Below are positions 6,695-58,242 of a stretch of 64,000 bases of DNA, one piece after another. A program made the translations under genes and the position numbers. The stretch covers positions 124,001 to 188,000 of IMG/VR virus record IMGVR_UViG_3300032236_001850; one strand, written 5' to 3'. The stretch's first letter is position 1, and the number at the start of each line of letters is the position of its first letter. The notes under the pieces were generated by a model that worked only from the letters and a program-made list of their open reading frames with translations, did no database searches and had not been told where the DNA came from.

Positions 6695-6985
6695 TCACTT
6701 CACAGAAATCCAACCCTTACCCAGACAAACCAGATTTATAATGTCACAGTGTTCATCTGGAATATTAACCATTGTGAAGTATGAATGATCATAATCCTTA
6801 TTTGATTCAGCAAAGACACCATATAGATTTCTTCCACTGTAATATCCTGCAAGTTTTCTTCTAATATCCATATCCTCGGAGTTGCCAAAGGAGTATTTCT
6901 GACCACCAATAAATTTGAAGGAGCCCATTATGGAATCATTTAGACAATATTCTTCTCTGTAGATAAAGGATTCACCGGAGCACAT
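6695..6985 (-). CDS. Hypothetical protein, C-terminal WxxVK
   Basis: TAATG coupling to upstream gene; ends GWISVK. Confidence 0.7.
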   Translation of the reverse strand: MCSGESFIYREEYCLNDSIMGSFKFIGGQKYSFGNSEDMDIRRKLAGYYSGRNLYGVFAESNKDYDHSYFTMVNIPDEHCDIINLVCLGKGWISVK

Positions 6986-7245
6986 TATCTGATCTTTATA
7001 AATTCAGGTGCGTTAGCATAAGCCTCCAGAAGTTCATAGATTCTTTGTGACACAATAAGCGAACTCGTTCTCCAAGCATCATCACCGTTGAATCCACCTC
7101 TTATTTTATAAACATGATCCCGACCGTTGCGAACGCGCAACTTCTCAATCTCATAAGTCTCACCATGTTTCATTTCAATTTCACCATCACTGGTTCTGAT
7201 TGGCTTTATATCAAACCAACTCTTATATACAAAACTTTCCATCAT
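6985..7245 (-). CDS. Hypothetical protein, C-terminal FIKIR
   Basis: TAATTTTG promoter at 7250-7257 (minus); ends PEFIKIR. Confidence 0.75.
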   Translation of the reverse strand: MMESFVYKSWFDIKPIRTSDGEIEMKHGETYEIEKLRVRNGRDHVYKIRGGFNGDDAWRTSSLIVSQRIYELLEAYANAPEFIKIR

Positions 7246-7298
7246 GCGACAAAATTAAAAAATGTTTGCGGATAAAAAAAATAATGCACAATAAAAAA

Positions 7299-7322
7299 CA
7301 TACTATGTTACTAACATACTAT
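7299..7322. repeat. Nested palindrome element (CATASTATG-TTASTAA-CATASTAT), copy 1
   Basis: catactatgttactaacatactat in a divergent intergenic region. Confidence 0.9.
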
Positions 7323-7497
7323 CTACGCAGATCCCACCCAGGGCGCATATACGTTCGCGTATATGAACGCGCTATTAAAAACATATGTAGATCCGGTAAA
7401 ATGGTTTTACTTCAGCAGCAAACAAATAAACAAGCAAAAAACAAACTATCGGAACATTTCATAAAAAAATCGATAGAATCTTTGAAAATCCCGCAAA

Positions 7498-7680
7498 ATG
7501 GCAAAATTTATATCTCCTCAGAAAAAGTTGGAGAATGATGAATCACTAAGAAGAATCAAGATTCGTCTGGATATTAGATTTGGTAGATATAGAGATGAAA
7601 TGAAGAACGAGATACCAATCGGGATTAACGGTTCCAAGTACTACAGGGTTAAAAAACTAGAAAACAAAACGGATGAGTAG
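7498..7680 (+). CDS. Small basic hypothetical protein
   Basis: 60-aa ORF overlapping the next start. Confidence 0.6.
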   Translation: MAKFISPQKKLENDESLRRIKIRLDIRFGRYRDEMKNEIPIGINGSKYYRVKKLENKTDE

Positions 7681-7876
7681 AAAAGTTACATTAGCGGAGG
7701 GATTACGAGAAGCTGCAGGAAATCTCACAATAGTTTATATCTGTTACGCATTAATACAGTGGGAACCAAATCCACTGAAATGGAATCCAATAGTACAGTA
7801 CTTTGCCATTTTTATGTCGTGTATTTATTTTCCATATAGGGACAATCAAAGATGGGAGAGGGATAAGGACAAATAA
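7673..7876 (+). CDS. Small two-TM membrane protein
   Basis: Two hydrophobic segments flanking WEPNPLKW. Confidence 0.75.
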   Translation: MSRKVTLAEGLREAAGNLTIVYICYALIQWEPNPLKWNPIVQYFAIFMSCIYFPYRDNQRWERDKDK

Positions 7877-7921
7877 TCCCACGGTGTCCGCACATACACG
7901 ACCGCATTCGATATATAATGT

Positions 7922-8554
7922 ATGAAAATAATAAAGACATTCGAGAGTTTCGAGGAGAAGGAATACACCTTTGATGAACTATCACAAGATGCAAAGAATC
8001 ATGCAATAGAGAACGAGAGAGGTTCATTGTATGACAGTATGGGTGATTGGTGGTACGAAGGAACAATAGAGGATGAAGCACAAAAACTAAGGGATGAGGG
8101 ATTTGAAGATGTTGATATACAATTTTCAGGATTCCACAGTCAAGGTGATGGAGCTTCATTTACTGGCAGAGTATCAGACATTAAACTTTTTGTTAAAGGC
8201 ACTCTCGATATGAAAACCATGAGCGACCAGGTTTTAGATAACATTTACATCTCAGTGGTTAGAACAGACACCAGACACGTTCATGAAAACTCGGTTAGGT
8301 TTGATTGTGAAGTTGACGGTGAGGAAGAAATAGTTTTATTCAGAGCACCAGGTTCAAATCTAGATATAAAAATATCAATTCAGTCTCAGTGTGATAAAAT
8401 AGAAGAAGTCGGAGCACCTTGGGTCAAGAGTAGATGTAAGGAGATATATGAAAAACTCGGTAAGGAGTACGACAGCTACTTTGAAGAGGAACACATAATA
8501 GCAGACATTAAAGCAAACGACTGTAAGTTTGACGAAGACGGAGATTTAATTTAA
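7922..8554 (+). CDS. YTFxELS-family phage protein with CTS-like leader
   Basis: YTFDELSQDAK..., FSGFHSQGDGASF; GATATATA 4 nt upstream; paralogous to 9805..10410. Confidence 0.85.
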   Translation: MKIIKTFESFEEKEYTFDELSQDAKNHAIENERGSLYDSMGDWWYEGTIEDEAQKLRDEGFEDVDIQFSGFHSQGDGASFTGRVSDIKLFVKGTLDMKTMSDQVLDNIYISVVRTDTRHVHENSVRFDCEVDGEEEIVLFRAPGSNLDIKISIQSQCDKIEEVGAPWVKSRCKEIYEKLGKEYDSYFEEEHIIADIKANDCKFDEDGDLI

Positions 8555-8586
8555 AGCACATCAAAAAGATGTGCTTTTATTTTTTT
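8554..8586 (+). terminator. Intrinsic terminator
   Basis: AAGCACATC-aaaaa-GATGTGCTT then T run. Confidence 0.75.
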
Positions 8587-8634
8587 ATTCCGAAATGATT
8601 TCATATATTTGCAATGATAATTATAATTGTAACT

Positions 8635-21024: not shown

Positions 21025-21846
21025 ATGGACGATCAATTAAGAGAGCTACTCAATGAGCTTAACAAGCACAAGAAAGAACAGGATGAGCTATCATCCAAAG
21101 TTCTAGAAATACTCAAAGGAGCTGACAGAGTTAGCGTTATGCCCGAGGTGCTGTGCTCCATATTCGAATCACTGGAACATGAAGGTGACATGAATTTTCA
21201 GAATCTAATAATGTATTGGGGATTGGAAAGATACGTTTCCAAGAAAGTTACTGCTCAGATTGAAAATATAGGAAAGCTTTATGACCACTGTGTGAAAGAA
21301 AACTACACACAGGATAACACCTGGCATTGGGGATCTGGAGACAGAACAGTCTGCTTCATACCATCAGAAACTAAGAAAATACTTCTCTTCGAGAACCAGA
21401 ACATCCAGTTTGTTTGTGTGGTTGATCTAGGAAGACTTGGAGATCTACATATTAGAAAGGTTTATCCCGATTTATTCAACGAGTACTCGGGATATGGTTT
21501 CTATAGCCTCGGAAGCTTTGGTGATGTTGATCATCTAAGAGAAGGTTTAAAGGGAGAAAATGGTTTAGAAATAGCTGTTGCAAATCTAACTGGGAAATAT
21601 AAGGAATGGTCAAATTCAATTTCTGGTGTTAAATATCCATGCAGAATAAGTCTCAAAAGTATGATTGAAGACGACTTCTCCGCACCAAATAGAGCATTTG
21701 ACTATGGCGATAACAGGGACGAGGGCTACATTCTTTCAGTAAAGTTTATGGATAGATGCGAAGTTAGTGACTATTACCAAGCAGCATATGTTTTCTATGA
21801 TGTTATTGGAGCTATAAAAGAAATGGAAGAAAATAATCATGAGTAA
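21025..21846 (+). CDS. Hypothetical protein
   Basis: 273-aa ORF. Confidence 0.85.
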   Translation: MDDQLRELLNELNKHKKEQDELSSKVLEILKGADRVSVMPEVLCSIFESLEHEGDMNFQNLIMYWGLERYVSKKVTAQIENIGKLYDHCVKENYTQDNTWHWGSGDRTVCFIPSETKKILLFENQNIQFVCVVDLGRLGDLHIRKVYPDLFNEYSGYGFYSLGSFGDVDHLREGLKGENGLEIAVANLTGKYKEWSNSISGVKYPCRISLKSMIEDDFSAPNRAFDYGDNRDEGYILSVKFMDRCEVSDYYQAAYVFYDVIGAIKEMEENNHE

Positions 21847-22150
21847 AATAACATTTGACGAGTTCTGTAATATGATATGCGATGGAATGTACGATCCAAA
21901 ATTTCCATTGGAAGTTCAGTGTTCAGGATACAAGAACCTCAGAAAAATGGTAATTGAAAATATTAGACCAGCATCACTGGAGGAGATGAAGAGATGGGAA
22001 ACCAATCCAACACCAGAGGAACTCTGGGCAGTTCCTGATATTAAATATCTAAGATTTCTACATTTTAAGCTAAGAGAATACATCGTGGAAAATTGGGACG
22101 ATATAATGAAGCTACACTTTTGTAGATTTGAATTTACTAAAATTAAATAG
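21839..22150 (+). CDS. Hypothetical protein, C-terminal FTKIK
   Basis: Ends RFEFTKIK. Confidence 0.8.
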   Translation: MSKITFDEFCNMICDGMYDPKFPLEVQCSGYKNLRKMVIENIRPASLEEMKRWETNPTPEELWAVPDIKYLRFLHFKLREYIVENWDDIMKLHFCRFEFTKIK

Positions 22151-27597: not shown

Positions 27598-28038
27598 ATG
27601 TTAAAAGAATCAAAACTATACAAAACCTACATCAGATTTAATAAGGACGAGAAGGTCTTTGAGGAGATAGTTCTAGACAGAACACATCAGGAAAGATTCG
27701 AACGTTTTAAATCTCGACTCGAATTTTGTGTCTCTGTTGGGGATTTAGTTAGGGTTAGAGATGGTAGTGGAAATTTAGATTTTGATGATGGAAAGAAACG
27801 ATTCGGCATTGACGAGCTATTCAAACAGAATCCAGCATTAGTCATCGAGACTGGTCTTTCTTTTATAACAGAACCCATGGTGGGAATAGGTGAGAGCTCC
27901 AGATACGTCCTGGATCTACTTCTTCTTTTTCCAGAAGGGGAAAGAGTTTACACGTCGACCACCTTTGTGGAACCGACTAATGATGATGAATGGAGATATT
28001 ACGGAACAACATGGCCAAAATGGGACAGAATCAGATAG
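27598..28038 (+). CDS. Hypothetical SH3/KOW-like protein, C-terminal WDRIR
   Basis: VGDLVRV motif; ends KWDRIR. Confidence 0.8.
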   Translation: MLKESKLYKTYIRFNKDEKVFEEIVLDRTHQERFERFKSRLEFCVSVGDLVRVRDGSGNLDFDDGKKRFGIDELFKQNPALVIETGLSFITEPMVGIGESSRYVLDLLLLFPEGERVYTSTTFVEPTNDDEWRYYGTTWPKWDRIR

Positions 28039-28274
28039 GGGTCATCAAAAATGATATTGAGTTCGATTACAGACTCGATGATCCCTATGCTGGGATTATA
28101 TTTGCTACCCTACGCAAGGGTGAATTTGTTAAACTCAGTAATCCAAGAATTGGTAACTTTGATACTGTTTACTATGATGGTCTAATAACGGAAGGAGAGC
28201 ACAGTGGGGTGGTTTTAAATATAGCAGATTATGATGTTGACATAATAGACACAACATGGAAAAAGATCAGATAG
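28020..28274 (+). CDS. Small beta-barrel-like protein, C-terminal WKKIR
   Basis: Start within 19-nt overlap; ends TWKKIR. Confidence 0.8.
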   Translation: MGQNQIGVIKNDIEFDYRLDDPYAGIIFATLRKGEFVKLSNPRIGNFDTVYYDGLITEGEHSGVVLNIADYDVDIIDTTWKKIR

Positions 28275-28477
28275 CAATATTAAAAAACTCTAGACTTATT
28301 AGATCAAGTAATGGATATGTGCTATGGAAATCAGGAACTGGATTGATAGCAACCAAGACAAATTTTGAGGATTTGTACATCGTAAACACACTAGAGAATA
28401 ACGTTTTACATTGTTCAATATCATCAGCGGAGATAATAATATTAGAATGGGTAAATAAATGGAAAAGACTAAGATAG
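28256..28477 (+). CDS. Small protein, C-terminal WKRLR
   Basis: 19-nt overlap start; ends KWKRLR. Confidence 0.8.
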   Translation: MEKDQIAILKNSRLIRSSNGYVLWKSGTGLIATKTNFEDLYIVNTLENNVLHCSISSAEIIILEWVNKWKRLR

Positions 28478-28740
28478 GTGTTTTAACACAGAAACTGGTC
28501 TTCCAAGAAAAATGTGGGGAAACTTTCAAAGAGATCACGTGGCATAAAGGAACCATAGTGGAGATATACGAATGTGGAGAAAATATTTACCATAAGACCA
28601 AAAGACTTCAGTATCAAGAAAGTGATAAGGTAAAAGTTTACTACTGTAACGAATGGAAGTTTACCATGATAGCTAAACACCGGATAGATGTTATGGAGGT
28701 GGATGATATTAGATGGGAAAAAATATTAAGCAAAGATTAA
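28459..28740 (+). CDS. Small protein, C-terminal WEKIL
   Basis: 19-nt overlap start. Confidence 0.8.
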   Translation: MEKTKIGVLTQKLVFQEKCGETFKEITWHKGTIVEIYECGENIYHKTKRLQYQESDKVKVYYCNEWKFTMIAKHRIDVMEVDDIRWEKILSKD

Positions 28741-28750: not shown

Positions 28751-29026
28751 GTGATACAAGCAAATGACGTGCATATAGCGGTTCTTAAGGAGACATTTAG
28801 GACAACCAATTATCAATCAGGTGGATTTATAACATGGAACGAAAATGAAGCAGTACAGGTCAAGCATAATGGAGTTGACGGATCACCGCTATGGTACTGT
28901 TTAAAATTGGATGAGTCTACGGATGTTGACATTGATGAATTCATATATAATGGTCTTGTAGCTGCTTCGAGCCAGTTGGATTTTATAGAAGTTAATTGGG
29001 TAAATGTAAATGGGATCAACAGATAA
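28751..29026 (+). CDS. Small protein, paralog A1
   Basis: GTG start; first ~108 nt nearly identical to 29173 onward. Confidence 0.8.
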   Translation: MIQANDVHIAVLKETFRTTNYQSGGFITWNENEAVQVKHNGVDGSPLWYCLKLDESTDVDIDEFIYNGLVAASSQLDFIEVNWVNVNGINR

Positions 29027-29159
29027 ATTAGGAGTAGTTAAAAAAATTCGATGCATCCATATACAGAAAAGATCTTATATGGGAGGAAGGAGAGATTGTT
29101 TGGATTGGTGGCGAAGATTAATAGATGGAATCCAAATAGAATTTAAACGAATAAGGTGA
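29010..29159 (+). CDS. 49-aa ORF B1, doubly frameshifted paralog of 29442..29660 (not in ORF track)
   Basis: MGSTDKLGVVKK...IQIEFKRIR; middle DNA aligns to B2 in another frame. Confidence 0.55.
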   Translation: MGSTDKLGVVKKIRCIHIQKRSYMGGRRDCLDWWRRLIDGIQIEFKRIR

Positions 29160-29455
29160 TTGATATGGATGAAATACAGGCAAATGACGTGCGTATAGCG
29201 GTCCTTAATAAGGCATTTAAGACAACCAATTATCAATCAGGTGGATTTATATCATGGAACGAAAATGAAGCAGTACAGGTCATAAAACACGGTGGAAGGA
29301 TGAGTATGCACCTATGGTGCTGTATAAAAATGGAAGATCCAGTAATTGGACTACATAGAAATAATCTACCAAAAAATCTTATTGTTTCTAGGAGTCATTT
29401 GGAGTTTATAAATATGGAGTTTATAAATATAAAAAACGAAGGTGGAACCAACTGA
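29156..29455 (+). CDS. Small protein, paralog A2
   Basis: TTNYQSGGFISWNENEAVQV shared with A1. Confidence 0.8.
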   Translation: MIDMDEIQANDVRIAVLNKAFKTTNYQSGGFISWNENEAVQVIKHGGRMSMHLWCCIKMEDPVIGLHRNNLPKNLIVSRSHLEFINMEFINIKNEGGTN

Positions 29456-29660
29456 TAGATTAGCAATTATAAAGACAGAATTCGAGACATCCATATATGG
29501 GAATGAACTTATATGGAAAGGTGGAGAGATTGTTTGGATTGGCGGGGAAGATGCTATAACTGGTATGGTAACTATTTGCAAATTTGACAAGCCATTTGCA
29601 ACATACGTTCCGAAAGATTCGGTTGATGAATTCATAATAGAATGGCAAAATATTGGATGA
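29442..29660 (+). CDS. Small protein B2, C-terminal WQNIG
   Basis: IWKGGEIVWIGGED; ends IEWQNIG. Confidence 0.8.
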   Translation: MEPTDRLAIIKTEFETSIYGNELIWKGGEIVWIGGEDAITGMVTICKFDKPFATYVPKDSVDEFIIEWQNIG

Positions 29661-29884
29661 TGGAAACTACCAAATATTTAGGTACATTAACAAGATCACT
29701 GGTATCGCAGGATTTAGGAAAGGATAAGATTCTATGGGGTGAGGGTGAAACAGTTATAGTAAAAGAAATTGACGGTAATCCAGAATATTTCAGGATAATC
29801 AAACTACAAAACACATTAGGAAATATGGTAGTGCCACACTCAGCATTCATATACTACAGACCAGACTGGGTCAAATTAAGGTAA
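29642..29884 (+). CDS. Small protein, C-terminal WVKLR
   Basis: 19-nt overlap start; ILWGEGETV resembles B2. Confidence 0.8.
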   Translation: MAKYWMMETTKYLGTLTRSLVSQDLGKDKILWGEGETVIVKEIDGNPEYFRIIKLQNTLGNMVVPHSAFIYYRPDWVKLR

Positions 29885-29939
29885 AAATATTTTTTTATTC
29901 AAAAAGAATTTCTTATATTTGCATATCAAATCAATCAAA

Positions 29940-30140
29940 ATGCAAACAGCAACACTTAGAAGATCGGTTTATACAAAATTTGGAGGTTATTACCCTAAGG
30001 GAGCAAAGGTGGAGGTTGATACAATTGATATGGCTAATGACAGGGTATCAATAAAAAAACTAAACTATGAAGGTCCGATAAGGGTTTCACTTAAACCTAA
30101 GGATTTAATTTTCAATATAAAATGGAAACAACTGACATGA
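29940..30140 (+). CDS. Small protein, C-terminal WKQLT
   Basis: ATG 29940 after early promoter. Confidence 0.8.
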   Translation: MQTATLRRSVYTKFGGYYPKGAKVEVDTIDMANDRVSIKKLNYEGPIRVSLKPKDLIFNIKWKQLT

Positions 30141-30583
30141 TATTTAGCAATTCCTTTTATGGAGCATTTCCTGACATGAAAGGGGAATTGATGCGCAGAA
30201 AAGAGCTTGAAGAAAAATTAGACAGAAAAAGAGGAGAAAATTTTATTAATAAGGGTGATTCGATTTCACATTTTCTAATGAAGGATTTCATTATAAACGA
30301 TGATGGAACGGAAAGACCTATAAAACTCAAAGATATATGCTTCGGAAAACCATTTCAGGGTTTAATTCCATCAAGACCCAGCATTTATGCTGTAACTTCA
30401 GTTCATTATGTAGCTGGTTACAAAATAGTTATAAAAAGATTTCAGGACACTTCAGACGACATCATTTGGTATGAAACACCAATAGACCATTACTACTGCA
30501 AAATATCAGAACTGGAGGGAGTAATACACGAACATCTACTCGAAGCAATACAAAGGGATTCAACATGGAACAGAGTAAAATAG
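30122..30583 (+). CDS. Hypothetical protein, C-terminal WNRVK
   Basis: 19-nt overlap start. Confidence 0.8.
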   Translation: METTDMIFSNSFYGAFPDMKGELMRRKELEEKLDRKRGENFINKGDSISHFLMKDFIINDDGTERPIKLKDICFGKPFQGLIPSRPSIYAVTSVHYVAGYKIVIKRFQDTSDDIIWYETPIDHYYCKISELEGVIHEHLLEAIQRDSTWNRVK

Positions 30584-34481: not shown

Positions 34482-34744
34482 TTTATATAAAGGAAATATT
34501 CACTGACGCTATGTTCGAATCCGGATATCGGAGGGATAACGACGAGTGCGACGTGTTTCCAATAGTAAGACCTGACGAGAGAATAAATCCAATAGTTATA
34601 GAAAGATTAAAATTAGCTACAAGAGGTAATAAACGTCTATATTGGATAACGGGATTCAATCTACCCAGCATGGATGCAGAAGAGGTGGAAAGAGAAGTAA
34701 TAAAAGATATAATGGAATGTTTAGTATGGGAAAATATAAAATAG
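34463..34744 (+). CDS. Hypothetical protein, C-terminal WENIK
   Basis: 19-nt overlap start. Confidence 0.8.
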   Translation: MDKNSIVYIKEIFTDAMFESGYRRDNDECDVFPIVRPDERINPIVIERLKLATRGNKRLYWITGFNLPSMDAEEVEREVIKDIMECLVWENIK

Positions 34745-37475: not shown

Positions 37476-37868
37476 ATGAAATATCTAGTTCCATTTATTA
37501 TTTTCTCCTCGCTCTGTTACCCGCAAAAAACAGAATATTACAGATATGGGTATGAAGGAATAGAGATGTTTGCTAAATTCAAGGATAGCACAATCATATA
37601 CACCCAACACCTTGCAAAGGCAACAATAAGGAAAGATGTGGCACTCGTAGTTTTAAATTTATATCCAAAAAGAAAACTAAATAATGGACATCTTGTGGTT
37701 GAGTTACCAAATGCCATAGTTACAGGTGAGATAAAAATAGAAAGAGCGGAGAAACTTGTGGTTATTAACTATTACTACGAAAAAGTGGAGTGGTGTGATA
37801 AGAATCTAATAGAAATACCAGAGGAACTTAAAAAATCAAAAATCGATGTACACACCAATAAAAGATGA
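37476..37868 (+). CDS. Secreted hypothetical protein
   Basis: N-terminal signal-like peptide. Confidence 0.75.
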   Translation: MKYLVPFIIFSSLCYPQKTEYYRYGYEGIEMFAKFKDSTIIYTQHLAKATIRKDVALVVLNLYPKRKLNNGHLVVELPNAIVTGEIKIERAEKLVVINYYYEKVEWCDKNLIEIPEELKKSKIDVHTNKR

Positions 37869-38208
37869 TGATGTTGCTTTAGTCAAATGGAAAGAGACAT
37901 CATATAAGGGCACACCTGTCTATATAGGTTTGATTAACGATTTTGTAGCTGCTGTGTGTACAAATAACTCCGGTATAGAATATGATGTTGTAGCAATCAG
38001 GTTCAGATTGAAATATTACGGAACTAAAATTGTTAATGAGGTTTATAAAACAGAATCAATAGGTGTGATAGCTGTCTATAGACACGGATGGACTCTATGT
38101 GATCTGAAGGAGGGTTTATGGTTATCATCAGCTGAGTTGGATAGAATTAACACAGCTATAGAAAAAGCATTGGATGAGAAAAAATTAGATTTTGTTGCAG
38201 TAAAATAG
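37846..38208 (+). CDS. Hypothetical protein, C-terminal FVAVK
   Basis: 120 aa. Confidence 0.75.
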   Translation: MYTPIKDDDVALVKWKETSYKGTPVYIGLINDFVAAVCTNNSGIEYDVVAIRFRLKYYGTKIVNEVYKTESIGVIAVYRHGWTLCDLKEGLWLSSAELDRINTAIEKALDEKKLDFVAVK

Positions 38209-38561: not shown

Positions 38562-38878
38562 ACATAATCAAAACCTTCGAAAGCTTCCATGCATTCGATA
38601 TGAACAACGAAAAGCTAGGGGTGGAAGGTCTAAGCAAATTCATAGGTAAACCACTTCTTGGTGGATATATCACAAACCCATTTGTTAATAATGCAGCTTC
38701 AGTTGGAGTGATGATTAGCGACACTCCAGACTCAGAACCAAATGATACGGATAACAAAATTCTATTTTGGATTAACGATTACTTTTGGCAATTGGATGGT
38801 CTTAGAGATAAGAAAACACCAAAGGATGAACAACTTCTTTCAGAGATGGCCAAAGTAATAGATGCAAGTGTACAGTAA
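38558..38878 (+). CDS. Hypothetical protein with CTS-like leader
   Basis: MNIIKTFESF; GATATATA at 38529. Confidence 0.8.
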   Translation: MNIIKTFESFHAFDMNNEKLGVEGLSKFIGKPLLGGYITNPFVNNAASVGVMISDTPDSEPNDTDNKILFWINDYFWQLDGLRDKKTPKDEQLLSEMAKVIDASVQ

Positions 38879-39009
38879 TGTGGTTATTAGATTTAATATT
38901 TGGCAGAAGAATAGATCCTAAGGCTGAGGTCGAAAAGGAACTAACATCAAAATACGGAAAGGATTGGCACAGATACGACGGAATCATTCACTGGGTCAGA
39001 CTAAGATGA
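38878..39009 (+). CDS. 43-aa peptide ending IHWVRLR (not in ORF track)
   Basis: TAATG coupling; carries the C-terminal tag. Confidence 0.65.
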   Translation: MWLLDLIFGRRIDPKAEVEKELTSKYGKDWHRYDGIIHWVRLR

Positions 39010-39516: not shown

Positions 39517-39885
39517 ATGATTAAGAAATACGACGATTTTATTAATGAATCAATAGGTTCCACATTCACACCTGAACAGCAGGAAATCATAAAAAATTTT
39601 GCTAAGGATCTGGAAAAGGTTTCATTGTATAAAATAAGTACAGAAACAGATAGTTCAAAATTTGAAATAAAGATGAATAAGTATTCTAATTTGTATGAAT
39701 ATGTCTATTCATGCTACATCAGCAATCGTATTTTATATCTAAGAAATTATAAAAGAAGAACATCGGGTTCATTAAGAGGTGTTATCTCTAATTTTCATGA
39801 GGAGTCACCAGAATCTCTAGAGGATGCATTGGGTATTATTGCAAAGAATACAGTTAAACAATACGAATTTAAAAGAATAAAATAA
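39517..39885 (+). CDS. Hypothetical protein, CTS-like leader plus FKRIK tail
   Basis: MIKKYDDFINES...YEFKRIK. Confidence 0.8.
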   Translation: MIKKYDDFINESIGSTFTPEQQEIIKNFAKDLEKVSLYKISTETDSSKFEIKMNKYSNLYEYVYSCYISNRILYLRNYKRRTSGSLRGVISNFHEESPESLEDALGIIAKNTVKQYEFKRIK

Positions 39886-39892: not shown

Positions 39893-40039
39893 TTATTTTT
39901 TCTTTCTTTTTTTCTTACGTTTAATTCTAACACAATTAGGAACTATCCTACCATCCAGTTCTTTAGTGCCTATCTGCTTAAATCCTACCCAGCATGGATC
40001 ATTCTTTTCGGCTAAAAATTCATCAAATTTTAGTATCAT
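39893..40039 (-). CDS. 48-aa CTS-leader peptide with CW...NCV motif and basic tail (not in ORF track)
   Basis: MILKFDEFLAEKNDPCWVGFKQIGTKELDGRIVPNCVRIKRKKKRKKK; TAATG coupling to 40039..40620. Confidence 0.8.
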   Translation of the reverse strand: MILKFDEFLAEKNDPCWVGFKQIGTKELDGRIVPNCVRIKRKKKRKKK

Positions 40040-40620
40040 TAGTCTTCTATTTTTTTAAATTCTCTAATCGAATTTTCATCAAAAATTGCAACATTCTTGC
40101 TTCCTCTTTCAACCAAACAGAATCCATCATAGCCCGATTTTTTAATTGCTTCTAATATAGGAGCACATTCTATGATTCTCCATGCTCCGTGTTTGATTCT
40201 CCAAAGGTAGTGATAAACACTATCACCTGGGTCATCAACATCAAATTCTCTGTCAGTGTCGTAATCATATCCCTTCATACCAGAAGCACTAACAGGTTTA
40301 AATTTGGTACCGTTAGTTTCATCCTCATATCCGCTAACAATCATCTTCTCTATCACACCCTTCAGGTCAAGCTTCTTGGCAATCTTAGGGTCCATAGGGT
40401 CACAAAGGTTAACTCCAGGTTTTAGCCACACTTCCCAAACTGCTCCATCCGGAAATTTTGATCTCTCATCAGCACCAGAAAAATCCTTAGCAAATGCAAG
40501 ATTACTAGTCAGAAATATACAACCACCAAATCTTTTCATTTTAGGTGGGAAATCTCCTTTTCTATTTCCGTGGTACAATCTCTCACCAACGAAAGATTCA
40601 AATAAAGCTATGTGTCTCAT
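40039..40620 (-). CDS. ADP-ribosyltransferase-fold protein with CTS-like leader
   Basis: RLYHG, IFLTSNLAFAKDF, GYDGF...VAIFDENSI. Confidence 0.7.
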   Translation of the reverse strand: MRHIALFESFVGERLYHGNRKGDFPPKMKRFGGCIFLTSNLAFAKDFSGADERSKFPDGAVWEVWLKPGVNLCDPMDPKIAKKLDLKGVIEKMIVSGYEDETNGTKFKPVSASGMKGYDYDTDREFDVDDPGDSVYHYLWRIKHGAWRIIECAPILEAIKKSGYDGFCLVERGSKNVAIFDENSIREFKKIED

Positions 40621-44610: not shown

Positions 44611-44677
44611 ATGACATTATCTCTAGGAACTCGGCCAATCCGAGCATATTACTAGGTGATATACGGATGGATTAAAA

Positions 44678-46744: not shown

Positions 46745-47152
46745 ATGAAACACATCAACACATTCTACCAACACATTAACGAATCAAAATCTCAAATAGC
46801 GGAAGCCATAGAGGTTAACGCAGATGAATTTGAATCAGCCGGTTCAAAAGAAGGAAATTTCATGGTTAATTTTCCAAAGGAAGATGTTGAAATTTTGAAG
46901 GATTTGAGTGAATTGATTGGATTTGAATGCGTTTCACAAGTTGGCATATTTCTAATGGTTACTAGAGATCCAAGCACTAGAGAAAAACCATTGGCATATT
47001 TTTCTAAAACCGCTAAATTATACAGAATGGAAATATACCCGAAGGAGCTTACCTGAGATAAATTATACTACTTGGGTGATTCACCAGAATCATTGATGGC
47101 TGTTTTCCTCAGCTATGTTGGATGGAGACCAGAGTGGATTAAAATAAGATAA
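46745..47152 (+). pseudogene. CTS-leader/WIKIR gene interrupted by in-frame TGA (47054-47056)
   Basis: Frame continues after TGA as DKLYYLGDSPESL...PEWIKIR-TAA. Confidence 0.75.
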
Positions 47153-47156: not shown

Positions 47157-47584
47157 ATGAAACACATACATACATTCTACCAACACATCAACGAATCTCA
47201 ACTCGAAATAGAATCGACCAATCTACCGGATGGGGTAAAAGAGATTGATGAAGAGGAACTTAAAAAATGGGGAAAAAAGCCACACAAATTCTTACCATCG
47301 GGGATGATGAAGCATTTAAACAGTTTAAAAATTGGACTGGAGTGACCAAATCTGAGGATCCCCGGGATTTGCTAGTCCTTAAATCATCATCCACCTCAGA
47401 GGAATATCAATGGTGCTTTGTTCTTTGGACCAAGGAAGAAGATGAGGAGAAAGCAAGACGATTTCTTTCAAGAACACTAGAGGGTGTTTTTGTAACATAC
47501 ATTATCACCTCACCGTCACAAAAAGTTAGAGAGCAGCTAATGCACTACATCAACGATTATGTTAAATGGATCAAAATCAGATAG
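47157..47584 (+). pseudogene. CTS-leader/WIKIR gene split by -1 frameshift at A-AAA-AAG (47273-47279)
   Basis: Leader in frame of 47157; WIKIR in the -1 frame (47267..47584). Confidence 0.75.
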
Positions 47585-47605: not shown

Positions 47606-48046
47606 ATGAAAAACTTAATGATTTTTACTGATTTTTTAAAAGAATCAATTAATTCAGGTGGAATGCCACATCGAAGATATGAAGAAATAACTAAAGATCA
47701 ATGGCGAGAGAAAAAAGAAACACTCCAATGTGTTAGCTTGACAAATGATGAGATAGAGTCAATAGATGAAATATATGAATTTATAAGGGATGTTATATAC
47801 CCAAAAGCAGAAAGAATAAAGTTTTGGGAGTTTTCTCAGAAAGACACTCAATATCTCATCGAAATACGTGATTTAAACATTATGATTACTAAATATTCAC
47901 CATCAATGTGGTTAATTTTTACTAATAGGAATGAGGATGTAGAAGATGAACATTTTTATATTGCAACTTCATTAAAGGAAACAATCGATCTTACAGCATA
48001 TCTTGCGGGTGAATTATTTCATATCGAATGGATCAAAATAAGATAG
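47606..48046 (+). CDS. CTS-leader/WIKIR protein
   Basis: MKNLMIFTDFLKES...IEWIKIR. Confidence 0.85.
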   Translation: MKNLMIFTDFLKESINSGGMPHRRYEEITKDQWREKKETLQCVSLTNDEIESIDEIYEFIRDVIYPKAERIKFWEFSQKDTQYLIEIRDLNIMITKYSPSMWLIFTNRNEDVEDEHFYIATSLKETIDLTAYLAGELFHIEWIKIR

Positions 48047-48050: not shown

Positions 48051-48683
48051 ATGAAACACATCCATACATTCTCACAACACATCAACGAGAGCTCCTCTCA
48101 GGAGATCATGGACTTCTGCAAGAAGTACAAGATTTCAATTGAACAGTTTAGAGGACAGGAGGAAATCCCAGGTGATTTTAGAAAACTTTCAAATCTAAAA
48201 TCCATTCCTTCAGGTTTCAACCCAAAGGTTGAAGGGAATCTGACTCTTTCCTCGATTTACAGCTTACCTGATGGGTTTTCACCCGTTGTTGGTGGAGATC
48301 TGGAACTGCATGAACTGAATCATTTGCCAGAGGGATTCTCACCCACTGTGGGAAGAGATCTACATCTGAACTATCTAAATCGTATTCCATATGAATTCAC
48401 TGTTAATGTGGGAGACAATCTGATTTTAGATAATGTGTATGAGGTTGGGAAGGGATTCTCACCCACTGTGGGCGGCAATCTGGATCTAGGATCACTCAGA
48501 ATTTATGCGGAAGGATTCTCACCCATCGTGGGCGGGAATCTAATCTTAAATAAAATGGAAAGCATTCCGCTAAAAGGTGTTTCGCTAAAAGGAGTTAAAG
48601 GAAAGATAGAACTTTTTCACAATTACAATCGTGTAAATCTAGAAACCATAGCGGGTGATATAAAATGGATCAAAATAAGATAG
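48051..48683 (+). CDS. CTS-leader/WIKIR protein with 22-aa LRR-like repeats
   Basis: Repeats LxxLPEGFSPxVGGDLxL; DNA repeat ggattctcaccca about every 66 bp. Confidence 0.85.
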   Translation: MKHIHTFSQHINESSSQEIMDFCKKYKISIEQFRGQEEIPGDFRKLSNLKSIPSGFNPKVEGNLTLSSIYSLPDGFSPVVGGDLELHELNHLPEGFSPTVGRDLHLNYLNRIPYEFTVNVGDNLILDNVYEVGKGFSPTVGGNLDLGSLRIYAEGFSPIVGGNLILNKMESIPLKGVSLKGVKGKIELFHNYNRVNLETIAGDIKWIKIR

Positions 48684-48695: not shown

Positions 48696-49517
48696 ATGAA
48701 AAGAATACTAACATTCCACCAGCTATTTGAAGCAGCCAAACCAAAGGACACATCTTGGATGCCAACCCCCGCGGAGATAAGTCAATTGGAAATTTTTCAA
48801 AATCTGAGAGATGATCATCTTATACGTTTATCCGAACCATACCTCTTAACACAGGGTCAGATAGAAAGGAATGTGAGATCAATAAGTTTTTCAACAGACA
48901 CCAATAACCTTTATAGACTGGAGCCAAATTCAGATGGCACAATCAACATCAAATTTGGAAGAAGCTACATAGCCAAAAATAAGCCTTTCAAAAACCAGGA
49001 GGAAATGACGGATGTTATTATTTACTTAATGATCGTAACAATAGCAATTTATGATCCTGTATGGAGTCGTAAGCCACACAATCCACCCAAAAGAACTCCT
49101 TTCAATGACGATCACGTGAAACTAAATGGGGAATTGGAGAGAGGTGATCTCGAAGGCTTGCTAAACGGCATCACAGAGCTTATGAAATCCAAATTTGGAT
49201 TCTGTGAGGAAAGACTGGTCCAGATTGCGATCATTCTGATGTGGTACATGAAGTCAGCCACACAGGAGGCAAAAAACAACTTCATAAAGCAACTGATCGT
49301 CAATGTGACAGCAGAGAGAATGTTCTTGCATTGGTGCCATCTGCCTAAAATTTTATCTCATCGCCAACCCTTCGTGTCGATGCCTGCAGTTACGGAAGGT
49401 CTCTCCATGGCATTCTCAGATTTTCTTAATAACAATGGGGATGCTCCAATGCCACCAGCTCTGGGGGAGTTCCTTTCCAAGATAACCGATGGGTTCAGAT
49501 GGATTAAAATCAGATAA
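48696..49517 (+). CDS. CTS-leader/WIKIR protein
   Basis: MKRILTFHQLFEA...FRWIKIR; N-terminal part resembles that of 44678..46609. Confidence 0.85.
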   Translation: MKRILTFHQLFEAAKPKDTSWMPTPAEISQLEIFQNLRDDHLIRLSEPYLLTQGQIERNVRSISFSTDTNNLYRLEPNSDGTINIKFGRSYIAKNKPFKNQEEMTDVIIYLMIVTIAIYDPVWSRKPHNPPKRTPFNDDHVKLNGELERGDLEGLLNGITELMKSKFGFCEERLVQIAIILMWYMKSATQEAKNNFIKQLIVNVTAERMFLHWCHLPKILSHRQPFVSMPAVTEGLSMAFSDFLNNNGDAPMPPALGEFLSKITDGFRWIKIR

Positions 49518-50062: not shown

Positions 50063-50065
50063 CAC

Positions 50066-50521
50066 ATGAAACACATACACACATTTCACCAACACGTCAA
50101 CGAATCCCAATCTCTACCTTCAGGGGTAAGCAAGGTGACAGCCGATGAGTATACAAAACAAAAATGTGTTCCTCTATCCCAGGAGGAAACTGAAAACATC
50201 TTATTCTTAACTAATATAGTGGAACTTGCTTCTTCGACAGATCCACAGAGGAAAAACGCGGATAGCGAGGACAATCAGATCTATCTTTGCGCTGGTTTTT
50301 ATCCTTATGGAGCTATTCCGCCATGGGCATTCTTCGGAAAGTCAAAGTCAGGAATTTACTATCTATCAGCTAATCCCACACGATTAACGGACACAGAAGG
50401 CCAGGAAAGCAACTATTACGCTGCAAACTCATTGCAACCTCTAATTTCAATTGCTCTTGATATGTTCATTAAACTTGGAATGGTTGATACCTCCGGAATC
50501 AGCTGGATCGAAATCAAGTAA
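50066..50521 (+). CDS. CTS-leader protein ending WIEIK
   Basis: MKHIHTFHQHVNES...ISWIEIK. Confidence 0.85.
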   Translation: MKHIHTFHQHVNESQSLPSGVSKVTADEYTKQKCVPLSQEETENILFLTNIVELASSTDPQRKNADSEDNQIYLCAGFYPYGAIPPWAFFGKSKSGIYYLSANPTRLTDTEGQESNYYAANSLQPLISIALDMFIKLGMVDTSGISWIEIK

Positions 50522-52390: not shown

Positions 52391-52415
52391 TCTGAGACCA
52401 CGGCAAACACGAACT

Positions 52416-52619: not shown

Positions 52620-52640
52620 TATGTTACTAACATACTATGT
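52614..52640. repeat. Nested palindrome element, copy 3 (perfect 13-bp arms)
   Basis: ACATAGTATGTTA-C-TAACATACTATGT. Confidence 0.92.
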
Positions 52641-52683
52641 CTGGGACTGACCACGAACACGTACACGAACTAATTAATAGAAA

Positions 52684-52989: not shown

Positions 52990-53005
52990 AGGAAAACTCT
53001 ATAGA

Positions 53006-53425: not shown

Positions 53426-53563
53426 GTGCGTGCAGGTAGCGCTCGCTTCCTGTAATCTACCGTGGGAAATTTGAGGTTAAAATCAGGGGGGTAAAAATAA
53501 TTTGAAATTTTTTATTTTTATATGAAAAAATGTCATATATTTGCAAAACAAAATCACATCAAC

Positions 53564-53791
53564 ATGGAACTTTACATCTTCAAAATCATGGACGAACCCA
53601 ACACCTATGTGAAGGTGAGCACCAAAACATTTAAGTGTCGCCGTACGAAGAATATAAATGATTCAAGTTGGTGGTTTACAAAGAGGAATGCAAAGTCTTG
53701 GGAATTCTCGATTAAAACGAAATTCCCAAGTGCCACAATGATCCCCGTGGATATGTCATTAACCGAGGTTAAATTCCAATCTATCAAATGA
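53564..53791 (+). CDS. Hypothetical protein, C-terminal FQSIK
   Basis: ATG 53564 after early promoter. Confidence 0.78.
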   Translation: MELYIFKIMDEPNTYVKVSTKTFKCRRTKNINDSSWWFTKRNAKSWEFSIKTKFPSATMIPVDMSLTEVKFQSIK

Positions 53792-54060
53792 TGAAGGATT
53801 TGATAAACATAGGTCTTCACAATCACATGTCAGCGGTGCTCAAGGCAGACCTCCTGGTTATCGACGACAAGGTCTATAAAGACCGGTCCGGTAAATATGA
53901 TGGGGCAGGAGAGAACCCAAGGGTTCTAATCCCGGAAGAAGAGCTAGACAAGGTTAGAGTGGAAGTCAATGAGGCAGGAACAATATTATCCTATGATGGG
54001 TCCCAAGGAAATATTATTCTTATATCAACAGCACCAATTAAATTTCAACAAATAAAATGA
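53788..54060 (+). CDS. Hypothetical protein, C-terminal FQQIK
   Basis: ATGA coupling. Confidence 0.78.
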   Translation: MMKDLINIGLHNHMSAVLKADLLVIDDKVYKDRSGKYDGAGENPRVLIPEEELDKVRVEVNEAGTILSYDGSQGNIILISTAPIKFQQIK

Positions 54061-56284: not shown

Positions 56285-56428
56285 TTTGGATGTTGCCATG
56301 AACATGCCGATTTAACATATGGATTTTTATGGATGTCCTATGGTAAACACCGTGGTAGAAACTTTAACGTTTTTAATCGTTTGTATGTAAAACCTTTCTC
56401 TTATATTTGCCTCGTAATTAAAACCAAA

Positions 56429-56923
56429 ATGAAAACAGAAACACACAGAATCGGAGACAAGGACAAGGTATACAAAGTATCCGAGTCGGGTACCTATTAT
56501 TCTAATGAAACACCAGATGAGGTGATAAGAGTATTAGAATCGCTAAGAGGTACACACCAAAGAGTTAAAATCTATCTTGGAGATAGAGAGACAGGCAGAG
56601 ATTGGATGGAGGAAGATGGCAAGGTTGGTAAGATAGGCAGAAGCACTGGTCCAATTAAAATTCCAATACTTCTTAGAACTATGAACAGCCACGGTGGCGG
56701 AGCACTGCTAGATGATTGCATCGTTAAGATAGTAACCTCGCCAACATCATCGACAAGAACACTATACCAGCACCCGAGGTATTACCAACCTGCCATGGAA
56801 ATCACAAATGAAGGTCTGGAAGGTAAGCCAGAGTACACTCACACATTAAGAATCGGCGGTGAGGTCTATAGCAGACACACTTCAATGAGATCAGCCCAAA
56901 GATTGGTCGCATTATTAAAATAA
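56429..56923 (+). CDS. Phage hypothetical protein
   Basis: ATG 56429; GRDWMEE...IGRSTGPIKIP...GGALLDDCIVKI. Confidence 0.85.
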   Translation: MKTETHRIGDKDKVYKVSESGTYYSNETPDEVIRVLESLRGTHQRVKIYLGDRETGRDWMEEDGKVGKIGRSTGPIKIPILLRTMNSHGGGALLDDCIVKIVTSPTSSTRTLYQHPRYYQPAMEITNEGLEGKPEYTHTLRIGGEVYSRHTSMRSAQRLVALLK

Positions 56924-57019
56924 AAACTTTAACGAAAAAAACCTTAAAATAATTTTTTTATCTAAATAGAATTTTTTACATTTACGGAGTAATTAATTAA
57001 ACACTTAAATACATTCACC

Positions 57020-57523
57020 ATGAACAAAAATGAAAAAAAAGCTGGAAACAGCGCAGTAGCAGCTTCGGCTGGGAAAGTTGAAAAAATGGCAAAAGCAGTT
57101 GTCAAAAAAGAAACTGCTAAAGTAGATGCTCCTGAGGCAGCAGTGGCTGAGGTGCCTGCACCGCTAGTACCGCACATCAACGGTGCCTTCGAAGTGGGGT
57201 CAAGAATCGAAACTTCATTGGTTTCTCCATTGAAAGTTTTCGGTAAAAAAGAAGCAACTGGTACTCCGGCTCAAATGAAGCCATGTGCTGCAATCATCTT
57301 AGAAAAGTTGGCCATCGCTGGTCCTACTGGAACTAACTTGATTAGAGTTAAAAAACCAGGTTCAACACGTATTTTCTACACAACTGAGGAAAACCTAATC
57401 GTAGGAGAGGGTGCACCAGCAGCGGTGGTAACGGCTCCAGTCGTTAAGGAGGAAAAACCTGCACCTGCACCAAAGGCTGCAAAAGCTCCAAAAGCTGAAA
57501 CAGTTGCAGAGACTGCTGAGTAA
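57020..57523 (+). CDS. Ala/Lys/Pro-rich protein with central small domain
   Basis: KPAPAPKAAKAPKAE tail. Confidence 0.8.
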   Translation: MNKNEKKAGNSAVAASAGKVEKMAKAVVKKETAKVDAPEAAVAEVPAPLVPHINGAFEVGSRIETSLVSPLKVFGKKEATGTPAQMKPCAAIILEKLAIAGPTGTNLIRVKKPGSTRIFYTTEENLIVGEGAPAAVVTAPVVKEEKPAPAPKAAKAPKAETVAETAE

Positions 57524-57541
57524 TCAGTAACCCACGGTATT

Positions 57542-57566
57542 AAAAGAGGCTTCGGCCTCTTTTTTT
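57542..57566 (+). terminator. Intrinsic terminator (identical family copy 2)
   Basis: AAGAGGC-TTCG-GCCTCTT-T run. Confidence 0.92.
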
Positions 57567-57601
57567 GTGGGCAAAGAATTCCTATGTCGGACCATGTGAT
57601 C

Positions 57602-57618
57602 CACCGTTGTCGACGGTG
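57602..57618. repeat. CACCG-N7-CGGTG element, copy 3
   Basis: caccg-ttgtcga-cggtg. Confidence 0.9.
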
Positions 57619-57722
57619 TTGGGGTTTGTCCCGCCTGAAACATGTCAAAAAAATAATTGATAAATTATCGTTGTGTTTGCTAAGGATTTATTATATTTGC
57701 TTTGTAATTAAACTATAACAAT

Positions 57723-58076
57723 ATGGATGAACTTGATGACGTATTGGAAAGGCTCAATGTCTTGGCAGAGAGGGTAAGAGCAATCAGAGAAACTCTGGAG
57801 GAAGTTGAAACAAAGGTTGGAGAGATCAAAGGACTTGAAGCCCGTATGGATTTTATAAAGAGAGCCAGAAGATTCACCAGCCACGACGAAGCTCTTGTAT
57901 GGAAAAATATAGAGGATGGTATCATCCGAAAAATAGACACGGCTTCGCCCGAACAGATGCAGATGCTTTTGGATAAGAAGGGATTTGCATTTAGATACTA
58001 TCCCGAGATATACGACGGTGTGGATAAGCTGGGCATGTTAACAATCAAAGAAAAACGATATGACACTACGATGTAA
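57723..58076 (+). CDS. Coiled-coil hypothetical protein
   Basis: After promoter 57692. Confidence 0.8.
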   Translation: MDELDDVLERLNVLAERVRAIRETLEEVETKVGEIKGLEARMDFIKRARRFTSHDEALVWKNIEDGIIRKIDTASPEQMQMLLDKKGFAFRYYPEIYDGVDKLGMLTIKEKRYDTTM

Positions 58077-58242
58077 AATATTCAGAAAGGTCAAGGTAAG
58101 TGATCTTGAAACGGAGATCAACAACTGGCTGGAATCCAATGATGATGTTGTGATTTCACAAGTAACACACAGCGAAGACGACCAATGGGGTACAGTTATT
58201 ATTTTCTATTCTAGAAAATTGGAATACGTAAAAGTGAAATAA
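58060..58242 (+). CDS. Cse60-like small protein, C-terminal YVKVK
   Basis: KIF...LETEINNWLESN...VIIFY. Confidence 0.75.
   Translation: MTLRCKIFRKVKVSDLETEINNWLESNDDVVISQVTHSEDDQWGTVIIFYSRKLEYVKVK

What the first reader, a model, noticed from the sequence alone, without database searches (positions are those of the whole stretch)
6695..58242. C-terminal W/F-x-K-I-R/K tag on more than 25 small, mutually unrelated proteins
Seen: termini WISVK, FIKIR, FTKIK, WDRIR, WKKIR, WKRLR, FKRIR, WQNIG, WVKLR, WKQLT, WNRVK, FEKVK, FQKIL, WIKIQ, WENIK, WQKIED, FVAVK, WVRLR, FKRIK, WIKIR (x5), WIEIK, FQSIK, FQQIK, YVKVK. The tag occurs on both early-promoter genes and CTS-leader late genes. Inference: a beta-strand-like terminal signal (docking by beta-augmentation, degron, or localisation to a phage compartment); together with the leader and the TGIKD module it suggests a combinatorial sorting code that I do not recognise as described.
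Basis: partly seen in the sequence, partly recalled or inferred. Interest (0 to 1): 0.82.

Follow-up and report, generated by a model that had tools for sequence, protein, structure and literature searches.

The report
Shared C-terminal peptide on phage proteins
About one in six genes in this stretch of a 434-kb uncultured phage genome ends in the same short peptide (aromatic-x-Lys/Arg-Ile/Leu/Val-Lys/Arg), a real, protein-level and lineage-specific signature whose role is unproven: it may be a docking signal, or only a strand inherited by fast-diverging gene copies.

Summary
With a mechanical gene set, 18 of 152 ORFs end in the strict motif [WFY]-x-[KRQN]-[ILV]-[KR], against 0.13 expected. 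Controls gave 0 of 932 ORFs in unrelated viral loci and 1 of 280 in the distant relative MA9V-2.

- **Source:** the window is part of a 434,509-bp IMG/VR contig, a T4-like phage probably of Flavobacteriia.
- **Selection level:** codons at the tag vary synonymously or conservatively, and a 430-kb sister genome keeps the pattern, so selection acts on the protein and not on the DNA.
- **"Mutually unrelated" is overstated:** eight or nine carriers are one tandem family of SH3-like paralogs. The WIKIR genes form a cluster that shares only an N-terminal T4-CTS-like leader and the tag. Tagged genes also cluster along the genome.
- **More than one fold:** no sequence similarity extends upstream of the tag in the other carriers.
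- **Expression class:** tagged genes lie behind both early-like and late-like promoters.

My best reading (about 0.4) is a C-terminal docking or recognition strand on early-acting accessory proteins. The main rival (about 0.3) is a terminal strand merely inherited by hyperdivergent paralogs. No partner was identified. I found no description of such a tag in four full-text literature searches.

The parts
6695..6985 (-). 96-aa ORF ending GWISVK
6985..7245 (-). 86-aa ORF ending EFIKIR
21839..22150 (+). 103-aa ORF ending EFTKIK in an early-like operon. The L007 ortholog (89% identity) ends EFVQIK.
27598..28038 (+). 146-aa ORF ending KWDRIR. The L007 ortholog ends KWERIR.
28020..28274 (+). SH3-like array member ending TWKKIR. 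Its ATG overlaps the Trp codon of the preceding tag.
28256..28477 (+). SH3-like array member (73 aa) ending KWKRLR. AF2 pLDDT is 83, with the tag lying after the last strand.
28459..28740 (+). SH3-like array member with a near-terminal variant, RWEKILSKD
28751..29026 (+). SH3-like array member with an extended variant, NWVNVNGINR. Relatives end WRQIK, WDKLK or WETIKK.
29010..29159 (+). 49-aa ORF ending EFKRIR
29156..29455 (+). SH3-like array member with an internalised variant, EFINIKNEGGTN
29442..29660 (+). SH3-like array member ending EWQNIG, a degenerate form. Relatives end EWVKLR.
29642..29884 (+). SH3-like array member ending DWVKLR
29919..30140 (+). SH3-like array member ending KWKQLT. 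Relatives end WKQLI or WKQIA.
30122..30583 (+). 153-aa ORF ending TWNRVK. The L007 ortholog (61% identity) ends KWNQLK.
30909..31097 (+). 62-aa ORF ending EFEKVK, a paralog of 58060-58242. The L007 ortholog is 45% identical overall but its tag is 6/7 identical.
31097..31381 (+). 94-aa ORF ending QFQKIL
33862..34215 (+). 117-aa ORF with a near-terminal variant, KWKKIEWTTLEK
34179..34481 (+). 100-aa ORF ending TWIKIQ
34463..34744 (+). 93-aa ORF ending VWENIK, 98% identical in L007
36145..36771 (+). 208-aa ORF with a variant carrying one extra residue, EWQKIED
37846..38208 (+). 120-aa ORF ending DFVAVK
38878..39009 (+). 43-aa ORF ending HWVRLR
39517..39885 (+). 122-aa ORF with an N-terminal leader (MIKKYDDFINES), ending EFKRIK
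40039..40620 (-). 193-aa leader protein with a weakly ART-like fold, ending EFKKIED. More than 150 metagenomic homologs end F-x-K-I-L. In the AF2 model this segment is a confident terminal beta strand.
46745..47152 (+). Leader gene interrupted by an in-frame TGA (47054-47056). The downstream piece ends EWIKIR.
47267..47584 (+). 105-aa ORF ending KWIKIR. It is overlapped by the 62-aa leader ORF 47157-47345, so the two may be one frameshifted gene.
47606..48046 (+). 146-aa ORF with leader, ending EWIKIR
48051..48683 (+). 210-aa ORF with leader, ending KWIKIR
48696..49517 (+). 273-aa ORF with leader, ending RWIKIR, behind a late-like promoter
50066..50521 (+). 151-aa ORF with leader, ending SWIEIK
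53522..53791 (+). 89-aa ORF ending KFQSIK
53788..54060 (+). 90-aa ORF ending KFQQIK
58060..58242 (+). 60-aa ORF ending EYVKVK, a paralog of 30909-31097
44641..44670 (+). Relic: VIYGWIKIR followed by a stop, directly after an in-frame stop, in an intergenic region

Best explanation
The tag is a protein-level C-terminal module with the consensus aliphatic-[E/K]-[W/F]-x-[K/R]-[I/L/V]-[K/R]-COOH. It is carried by a lineage-specific set of small accessory proteins in a roughly 434-kb T4-like phage.

I read it as a short extended recognition peptide that docks these otherwise different proteins onto one common partner. The aromatic and the aliphatic residue, three positions apart, would fill two hydrophobic pockets, with the flanking basic residues and the nearby free end contributing.

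The carriers are either early-transcribed or made late with a T4-CTS-like leader. If that leader works as in T4, the late ones are packaged and injected. The shared property would then be presence in the cell at the start of infection, so the partner is most likely an early hub, either a host machine or an injected phage protein.

Shown: the motif, its enrichment, its terminal position, selection at the amino-acid level, its conservation in sister genomes, and its presence on at least two different folds.

Inferred: that it binds anything, how it binds, and the identity and timing of the partner.
For: - Enrichment is extreme and specific to the terminus: 18/152 against 0.13 expected, and half of all strict-motif occurrences are exactly terminal. 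There were none in 932 control ORFs.
- Codons differ while residue classes are kept (Ile as ATC/ATT/ATA; Val and Leu alternatives; Arg as AGA/AGG/CGA; W versus F). Orthologs in L007 show synonymous and conservative changes.
- In the 46745-50521 cluster only the 14-aa leader and the 5-7-aa tag are conserved, with synonymous differences, while the middles cannot be aligned. Both ends therefore behave as constrained modules.
- No similarity upstream of the tag was found among non-array carriers in a leave-one-out HMM test (mean quantile 0.49).
- In the SH3-like model the barrel ends at residue 63. The tag (residues 69-73) is not a regular strand and has lower pLDDT of about 70.
- A 45%-identical ortholog pair keeps 6 of 7 tag residues.
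- The tag is present behind both promoter classes.
Against: - No partner or receptor was identified, and only about 90 kb of the 434 kb were examined.
- Tagged genes are clustered (12 adjacent pairs against 3.9 expected, p about 5e-5) and neighbouring tags are more alike. Eight or nine carriers are one paralog family. Shared descent therefore explains part of the signal.
- In the ART-like family the tag-like segment is an integral, confident beta strand.
- Family members with extensions after the motif keep W-x-x-[IV], so a free carboxylate is not strictly needed.
- Tags are not more conserved by identity than the rest of most ortholog pairs.
Confidence: 0.4

Rival explanations
1. The tag has no separate signal function. 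It is the last structural strand, with an aromatic and an aliphatic core residue and a charged cap. It was inherited by tandemly duplicated small genes that diverge so quickly that only this most constrained segment stays recognisable. The ORFs stop right after it because phage genes are trimmed to the minimum.
For: - The SH3-like tandem array has the tag Trp as its most conserved column.
- Tagged genes are clustered and neighbouring tags are more alike.
- There are broken copies and a relic, as expected for a birth-and-death family.
- In the widespread ART-like family, F-x-K-I-L-COOH is a confident integral strand in the same register.
- Extended variants keep W-x-x-[IV].
Against: - The motif sits on at least two different folds and on 43-273-aa proteins with no similarity upstream of it.
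- In the WIKIR cluster other core elements are not conserved while both termini are.
- The position distribution is sharp, 19 exact against 1 at +1 to +3 residues, which is sharper than a purely structural end would suggest.
- The SH3-like model leaves the tag outside the regular strands.
- Other phages do not show this ending.
Confidence: 0.3
2. The tag is a turnover or expression determinant: either a C-terminal degron (or anti-degron) read by a host or phage AAA+ protease or adaptor to time the life of early-acting proteins, or a C-terminal context that tunes termination and expression.
For: - It is exactly terminal, with basic residues at -1 and -3 next to hydrophobic ones.
- It occurs on early and on presumably injected proteins.
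- From my own knowledge (not tested here), ClpX recognises some basic-hydrophobic C-termini such as that of MuA, and C-terminal Lys/Arg favour expression in bacteria.
- The relative MA9V-2 is annotated as encoding a ClpP subunit.
Against: - No protease or adaptor was found in the 90 kb examined.
- The invariant aromatic at -5 and the pattern at -7/-6 are not explained by termination effects.
- Nothing here measures stability.
Confidence: 0.15
3. The peptide is a by-product of a nucleotide-level element at gene junctions, such as an overlapping start codon and initiation region for the next gene, a recombination box for cassette shuffling, or a promoter.
For: - Fourteen of 18 Trp tags have A before TGG. 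In about 10 cases the next gene starts at that ATG with a 19-nt overlap.
- TAG stops are enriched after tags, 12/27 against 20/125.
- The region is A-rich, as expected upstream of starts in Shine-Dalgarno-poor Bacteroidota.
- Late-like promoters abut some tags.
Against: - Phe and Tyr tags cannot supply an ATG. Many Trp tags have no overlapping gene, including the four intact WIKIR genes (47267-49517).
- The variable positions are the synonymous ones while residue classes are conserved.
- The downstream N-termini encoded in the overlap are less conserved than the tag.
- A degenerate DNA search found only chance hits elsewhere.
Confidence: 0.05

Closest known systems
T4 capsid targeting sequence (CTS) / prohead-protease propeptide of internal proteins and Alt
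   Same: It is a short terminal peptide shared by otherwise unrelated phage proteins. The same genome carries a clear CTS-like N-terminal leader (MK.IK.F..[LF].E) on many genes directly behind late-like GATATATA promoters. That leader is low-confidence in the AF2 model. Several tagged proteins carry both.
   Different: The tag is C-terminal and has no consistent [L/I]-x-E cleavage site. It also occurs on leaderless genes in early-like operons. Its function is not known.
Encapsulin cargo-loading peptides and scaffold C-terminal capsid-binding tails (recalled from memory, not tested)
   Same: These are short C-terminal peptides with small hydrophobic and basic residues that dock diverse cargo to the inside of an HK97-fold shell.
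   Different: The sequence differs, since there is no G-S-L core. Many carriers here are early genes. No binding to the capsid protein was tested.
PTS1 / PDZ-ligand type C-terminal signals
   Same: The position is exactly terminal, across unrelated proteins.
   Different: The residue pattern differs, ending in K/R after an aliphatic residue. No TPR or PDZ receptor was found. Extended variants that keep W-x-x-I suggest the carboxylate is not essential.
LIR/AIM motif [W/F/Y]-x-x-[L/I/V] (beta-augmentation with two hydrophobic pockets)
   Same: The core spacing of aromatic and aliphatic residue is identical, and an acidic residue often precedes the aromatic one.
   Different: That is a eukaryotic Atg8 system and the motif is internal, not terminal. 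It serves only as a mechanistic analogy.
C-terminal strand of SH3-like barrels
   Same: For the 28020-30140 array, the fold is SH3-like and the tag lies at its end.
   Different: The other carriers are not detectably SH3-like. The model places the tag after the last barrel strand.

Membership tests
T4-type CTS / propeptide | N-terminal location, about 10 residues, ending in an [L/I]-x-E cleavage site | tested here: not met
   The tag is at the C-terminus. Only 3 tags have [LI]-x-E directly before the aromatic residue (my own reading of the tagged sequences printed). The separate N-terminal leader of this genome does meet this feature.
T4-type CTS / propeptide | Restricted to late, head-packaged proteins | tested here: not met
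   Tags occur in operons behind the early-like promoter motif at 27552, 29892 and 19966. Packaging itself cannot be tested with these tools.
T9SS C-terminal domain (Bacteroidota) | A 70-100-aa beta-sandwich CTD plus an N-terminal Sec signal peptide | tested here: not met
   The conserved part is 5-7 residues. No Pfam hit for any carrier. The N-termini printed are not signal-peptide-like.
Exact-C-terminus signals (PTS1 / PDZ-ligand type) | The motif must be at the free C-terminus | tested here: inconclusive
   19 of 38 strict occurrences are exactly terminal. However, family members with 1-11 extra residues keep W-x-x-[IV].
Exact-C-terminus signals (PTS1 / PDZ-ligand type) | A cognate receptor domain encoded by the phage or host | not tested
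   Only about 90 of the 434 kb were read, and the host is unknown.
Single shared fold (SH3-like paralog family) | All carriers are recognisable by one profile or fold | tested here: not met
   The A1 profile finds only the 8 array members. Other carriers match only over the tag. The leave-one-out test was negative. The ART-like carrier has a different fold.
Nucleotide-level junction element | Conservation of bases and not of residue classes | tested here: not met
   Synonymous and conservative codon variation within the window and between orthologs.
ClpX/ssrA-type degron | Tag-dependent proteolysis by an AAA+ protease | not testable with these tools
   There are no stability data, and no protease gene in the region read.

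The most novel reading that the evidence does not exclude
The phage uses a two-ended peptide code. The N-terminal CTS-like leader sends proteins into the head for injection. The C-terminal [W/F]-x-K-I-[K/R] tag, on injected and early-made proteins alike, then gathers dozens of unrelated effectors onto one early hub or compartment in the infected cell. This would be a PTS1-like sorting signal in a bacterial virus. Other C-terminal modules (TGIKD...IGRKLK.GLI, LGDLGF) would specify other destinations.
Probability: 0.15. Interest if true: 0.9.

Novelty: new variant of a known kind. Interest (0 to 1): 0.6.

Why it matters
Huge phages carry hundreds of small orphan genes that cannot be annotated by homology. 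A short terminal peptide shared by about 30 of them in 64 kb gives a way to group them. It is also directly testable by reporter fusions, tag deletion, peptide pull-down and virion proteomics. If it is a docking or sorting signal, it would be a C-terminal counterpart to the T4 capsid targeting sequence and would point to an unknown hub of early infection. If it is only an inherited strand, it documents unusually fast birth-and-death evolution of accessory genes with conserved ends.

Tried and rejected
- **Family and homology searches:** Pfam and PHROGs gave nothing for any carrier. ESM Atlas look-alikes were uninformative. tblastn against 50,697 phage records gave no hit for four carriers. Database homologs for 58060 and 39517 are only one or two near-identical sequences.
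- **Profile search:** the SH3-like profile against 1.84 billion representatives found only about 14 small relatives, all from the same lineage.
- **DNA search:** a degenerate search for WIKIR followed by TAG in IMG/VR gave chance hits only.
- **Stop-codon recoding:** rejected. Read-through lengths are ordinary and the window has no tRNA.
- **Charge:** no difference between tagged and untagged proteins.
- **Prohead-protease site in the tag:** rejected on inspection.
- **Walking the contig:** two look-ups found no record.
- **Literature:** four full-text searches found no description of such a tag.


Full report
**Source**

The window has no near DNA match among 50,697 phage records. Its proteins place it on IMGVR_UViG_3300032236_001850, a 434,509-bp contig, at roughly 124,001-188,000. 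An almost identical 434,721-bp ENA contig exists. A 430,120-bp sister contig has 45-98% identical orthologs.

The only cultured relatives found are jumbo phages of Flavobacteriia, at 29-33% identity for one 567-aa protein: Chryseobacterium MA9V-1 and MA9V-2 and Tenacibaculum pT24. MA9V-2 is annotated with T4-type head genes. Large contigs carrying a homolog of one window protein encode a Gp23-family capsid protein. GC content is 34-42%.

**Checking the observation**

- With a mechanical, greedy, non-overlapping ORF set, 18 of 152 ORFs end in [WFY].[KRQN][ILV][KR]. The motif's own internal frequency predicts 0.13 (p about 1e-32). Only 2 of 273 rejected shadow ORFs end that way.
- Over a 90-kb extended stretch, shuffling each protein gives a mean of 0.16 terminal matches against 19 observed. 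Of 38 occurrences anywhere in 28,076 residues, 19 are exactly terminal, 6 lie within ten residues of the end and 13 lie elsewhere.
- Controls: 0 of 932 ORFs in 67 unrelated viral loci, 8 of 56 in the sister locus, and 1 of 280 in the whole MA9V-2 genome.
Position -7 is usually aliphatic or Pro, and position -6 is usually E or K.

**Protein-level or DNA-level selection**

The evidence points to the protein.

- The aliphatic position uses ATC, ATT, ATA, GTN, CTN and TTA. The basic positions use AAA, AAG, AGA, AGG and CGA. The aromatic position is TGG, TTT, TTC or TAC.
- Between the two genomes, tags change synonymously or conservatively: FTKIK to FVQIK, WDRIR to WERIR, WNRVK to WNQLK, FEKVK to FEKIK.
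- In about ten cases the next gene starts at the ATG formed by 'A TGG', giving a 19-nt overlap. TAG stops are enriched after tags, 12/27 against 20/125. In the array this follows partly from the overlapping frame.
- Phe tags, and Trp tags with no overlapping gene, show the overlap is opportunistic and not the cause.
- There is no sign of stop-codon recoding, and the window has no tRNA.

**How unrelated the carriers are**

- With tags trimmed, BLASTP gives 29 clusters from 31 proteins.
- The genes from 28020 to 30140 nevertheless align as one divergent tandem family. A profile of that family recovers exactly its eight window members.
- The AF2 model of one member has pLDDT 83 and is an all-beta barrel. 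Its best PDB matches are SH3 domains, with TM about 0.6-0.7 and weak E-values.
- That family is tiny and lineage-restricted in a 1.84-billion-protein library. Its members nearly all end W-x-K-[IL]-[KR].
- For the other carriers, a leave-one-out profile test on residues -45 to -8 finds no similarity upstream of the tag (mean quantile 0.49).
- Tagged genes are strongly clustered, with 12 adjacent pairs against 3.9 expected (p about 5e-5). Neighbouring tags resemble each other more than distant ones do. Local duplication has clearly contributed.

**The WIKIR cluster (46745-50521)**

This is the most informative region. Its genes share a 14-residue leader, MKHI(H/N)TF.QH(I/V)NES, and the tag WI(K/E)I(R/K). 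Both carry synonymous differences between copies. The 90-250 residues between them cannot be aligned, apart from the N-terminal ~80 residues shared by 48051 and 50066 (28.6% identity).

Another may be frameshifted. A nine-codon relic lies at 44641-44670. The picture is a birth-and-death family in which only the two ends are held constant.

**Expression classes**

- A GATATATA element sits directly upstream of almost every gene with the MK.IK.F..F.E leader.
- A 20-nt element followed by a Bacteroidota-type TAnnTTTG box recurs 12-13 times ahead of the operons at 9.7-31.4 kb and at 41.3 kb.
- Calling these 'late' and 'early' is an inference, by analogy with T4 late promoters and host-type promoters.
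- Tagged genes occur in both classes.
- The leader resembles the T4 capsid targeting sequence and ends in [L/I]-x-E, the T4 prohead-protease consensus (established knowledge). It is the only low-confidence part (residues 1-8, pLDDT below 50) of an otherwise excellent model.

**Structure of the tag**

There are two models and they differ.

- In the SH3-like protein the last regular strand ends at residue 63. The tag (residues 69-73) is coil at pLDDT about 70. This member has a five-residue insertion, so the result may not generalise.
- In the 193-aa leader protein at 40039-40620, the tag-like IREFKK segment is a confident terminal strand (pLDDT about 96). That model has pLDDT 91 and weak Foldseek hits to ADP-ribosyltransferase-fold proteins. 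The motif F-x-K-I-L-COOH is conserved in more than 150 homologs at 57-84% identity from many uncultured large phages.
- The loci around those homologs have many leader genes but no tag enrichment.

**Interpretation**

The facts fit two readings.

1. The tag is a functional terminal module, a docking or recognition strand. In favour: extreme specificity for the terminus, presence on different folds, conservation of just the two ends in the WIKIR cluster, and absence from other phages.
2. The tag is only the most constrained structural strand of rapidly diverging paralogs. In favour: clustering, the SH3-like family, the integral strand in the ART-like family, and extended variants that still keep W-x-x-[IV].

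I favour the first at about 0.4 against about 0.3. I add one inference: both carrier classes, early-made and presumably injected, would be present at the onset of infection. That suggests an early hub as the partner. A degron or expression role (about 0.15) and a DNA-level by-product (about 0.05) are less likely. No partner was identified, and only about a fifth of the genome was read.

**Novelty**

Four full-text searches, including a comparative review of jumbo phages, returned nothing describing such a tag. The general kinds are known, namely terminal targeting peptides and lineage-specific expansions with conserved ends. This particular C-terminal signature in a phage appears undescribed.

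Noticed in passing
window 2075-6684(-), 7922, 14358-15179(-), 38558, 39027-41208, 44678-46609(-), 46745-53380; extended region 70287-81396: About 30 genes start with a T4-CTS-like leader, M-[KR]-x-[IL]-[KR]-x-[FY]-x-x-[LF]-x-E. Almost every one has a GATATATA element directly upstream, which is probably a late promoter. One of them is a CHAP-domain peptidase (14358-15179, Pfam E 5e-9).
   Followed up: partly
window 3339-3965(-), 4805-5569(-), 5569-6684(-), 44678-46609(-); window-equivalent 73313-73876 and 74479-75237 in L085: A second C-terminal module of about 35 aa occurs on larger leader proteins: KNPL.LY.LD..P..K..V..TGIKD[FY]..IGRKLK.G[LF][IM]. A third ending, ..LGDLGF, is at 2075-2779 and at ext 73876-74469. 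KGH[ND]LMI is at 8614-9159 and 9159-9734.
   Followed up: partly
window 40039-40620(-): A 193-aa leader protein with invariant Y-H-G-N-R and F-L-T-S motifs. The AF2 model has pLDDT 91. Foldseek hits are weak (E 0.02-0.3), to ADP-ribosyltransferase-fold proteins (AcrIF11, MbcT, ParT, PltA). It is possibly an Alt-like injected enzyme. It has more than 150 homologs in uncultured large phages and none among 50,697 phage records.
   Followed up: partly
window 46745-47152 and 47157-47584: The first is a leader gene with an in-frame TGA at 47054-47056. The second is a 62-aa leader ORF overlapping the next tagged ORF near an A-run. These may be pseudogenes, assembly errors or recoding. I did not resolve which.
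   Followed up: partly
window 8582-56974 (13 sites, + strand): A repeated 20-nt element, TTTTTATTCAAAAAGRATTT, is followed by a TAnnTTTG-like box ahead of operons. There are 13 matches against 0.22 expected, so it is probably a host-type early promoter.
   Followed up: partly
window 25413-26177: A 254-aa ORF with a GIY-YIG-like N-terminus lies between two conserved genes and is absent from the syntenic site in the sister genome L007. It is probably a homing endonuclease. Its YWKLK ending is a chance match to the loose motif.
   Followed up: no
L081 (jgi 3300050206, 201-kb contig) 4224-8540 and 14600-15009: A different recurrent C-terminal motif, R..[QK]ID.[IL]L[K], occurs on eight or more small ORFs of another large phage. 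Conserved-end small-gene families may therefore be common in such genomes.
   Followed up: no
window -7117 to 2062 (L084): Three large paralogous proteins (871, 1074 and 1087 aa; two begin MAYLLST.(S/N)GNWTS) lie just left of the window. The first window ORF (53-2062) is the C-terminal part of the 1087-aa protein.
   Followed up: no
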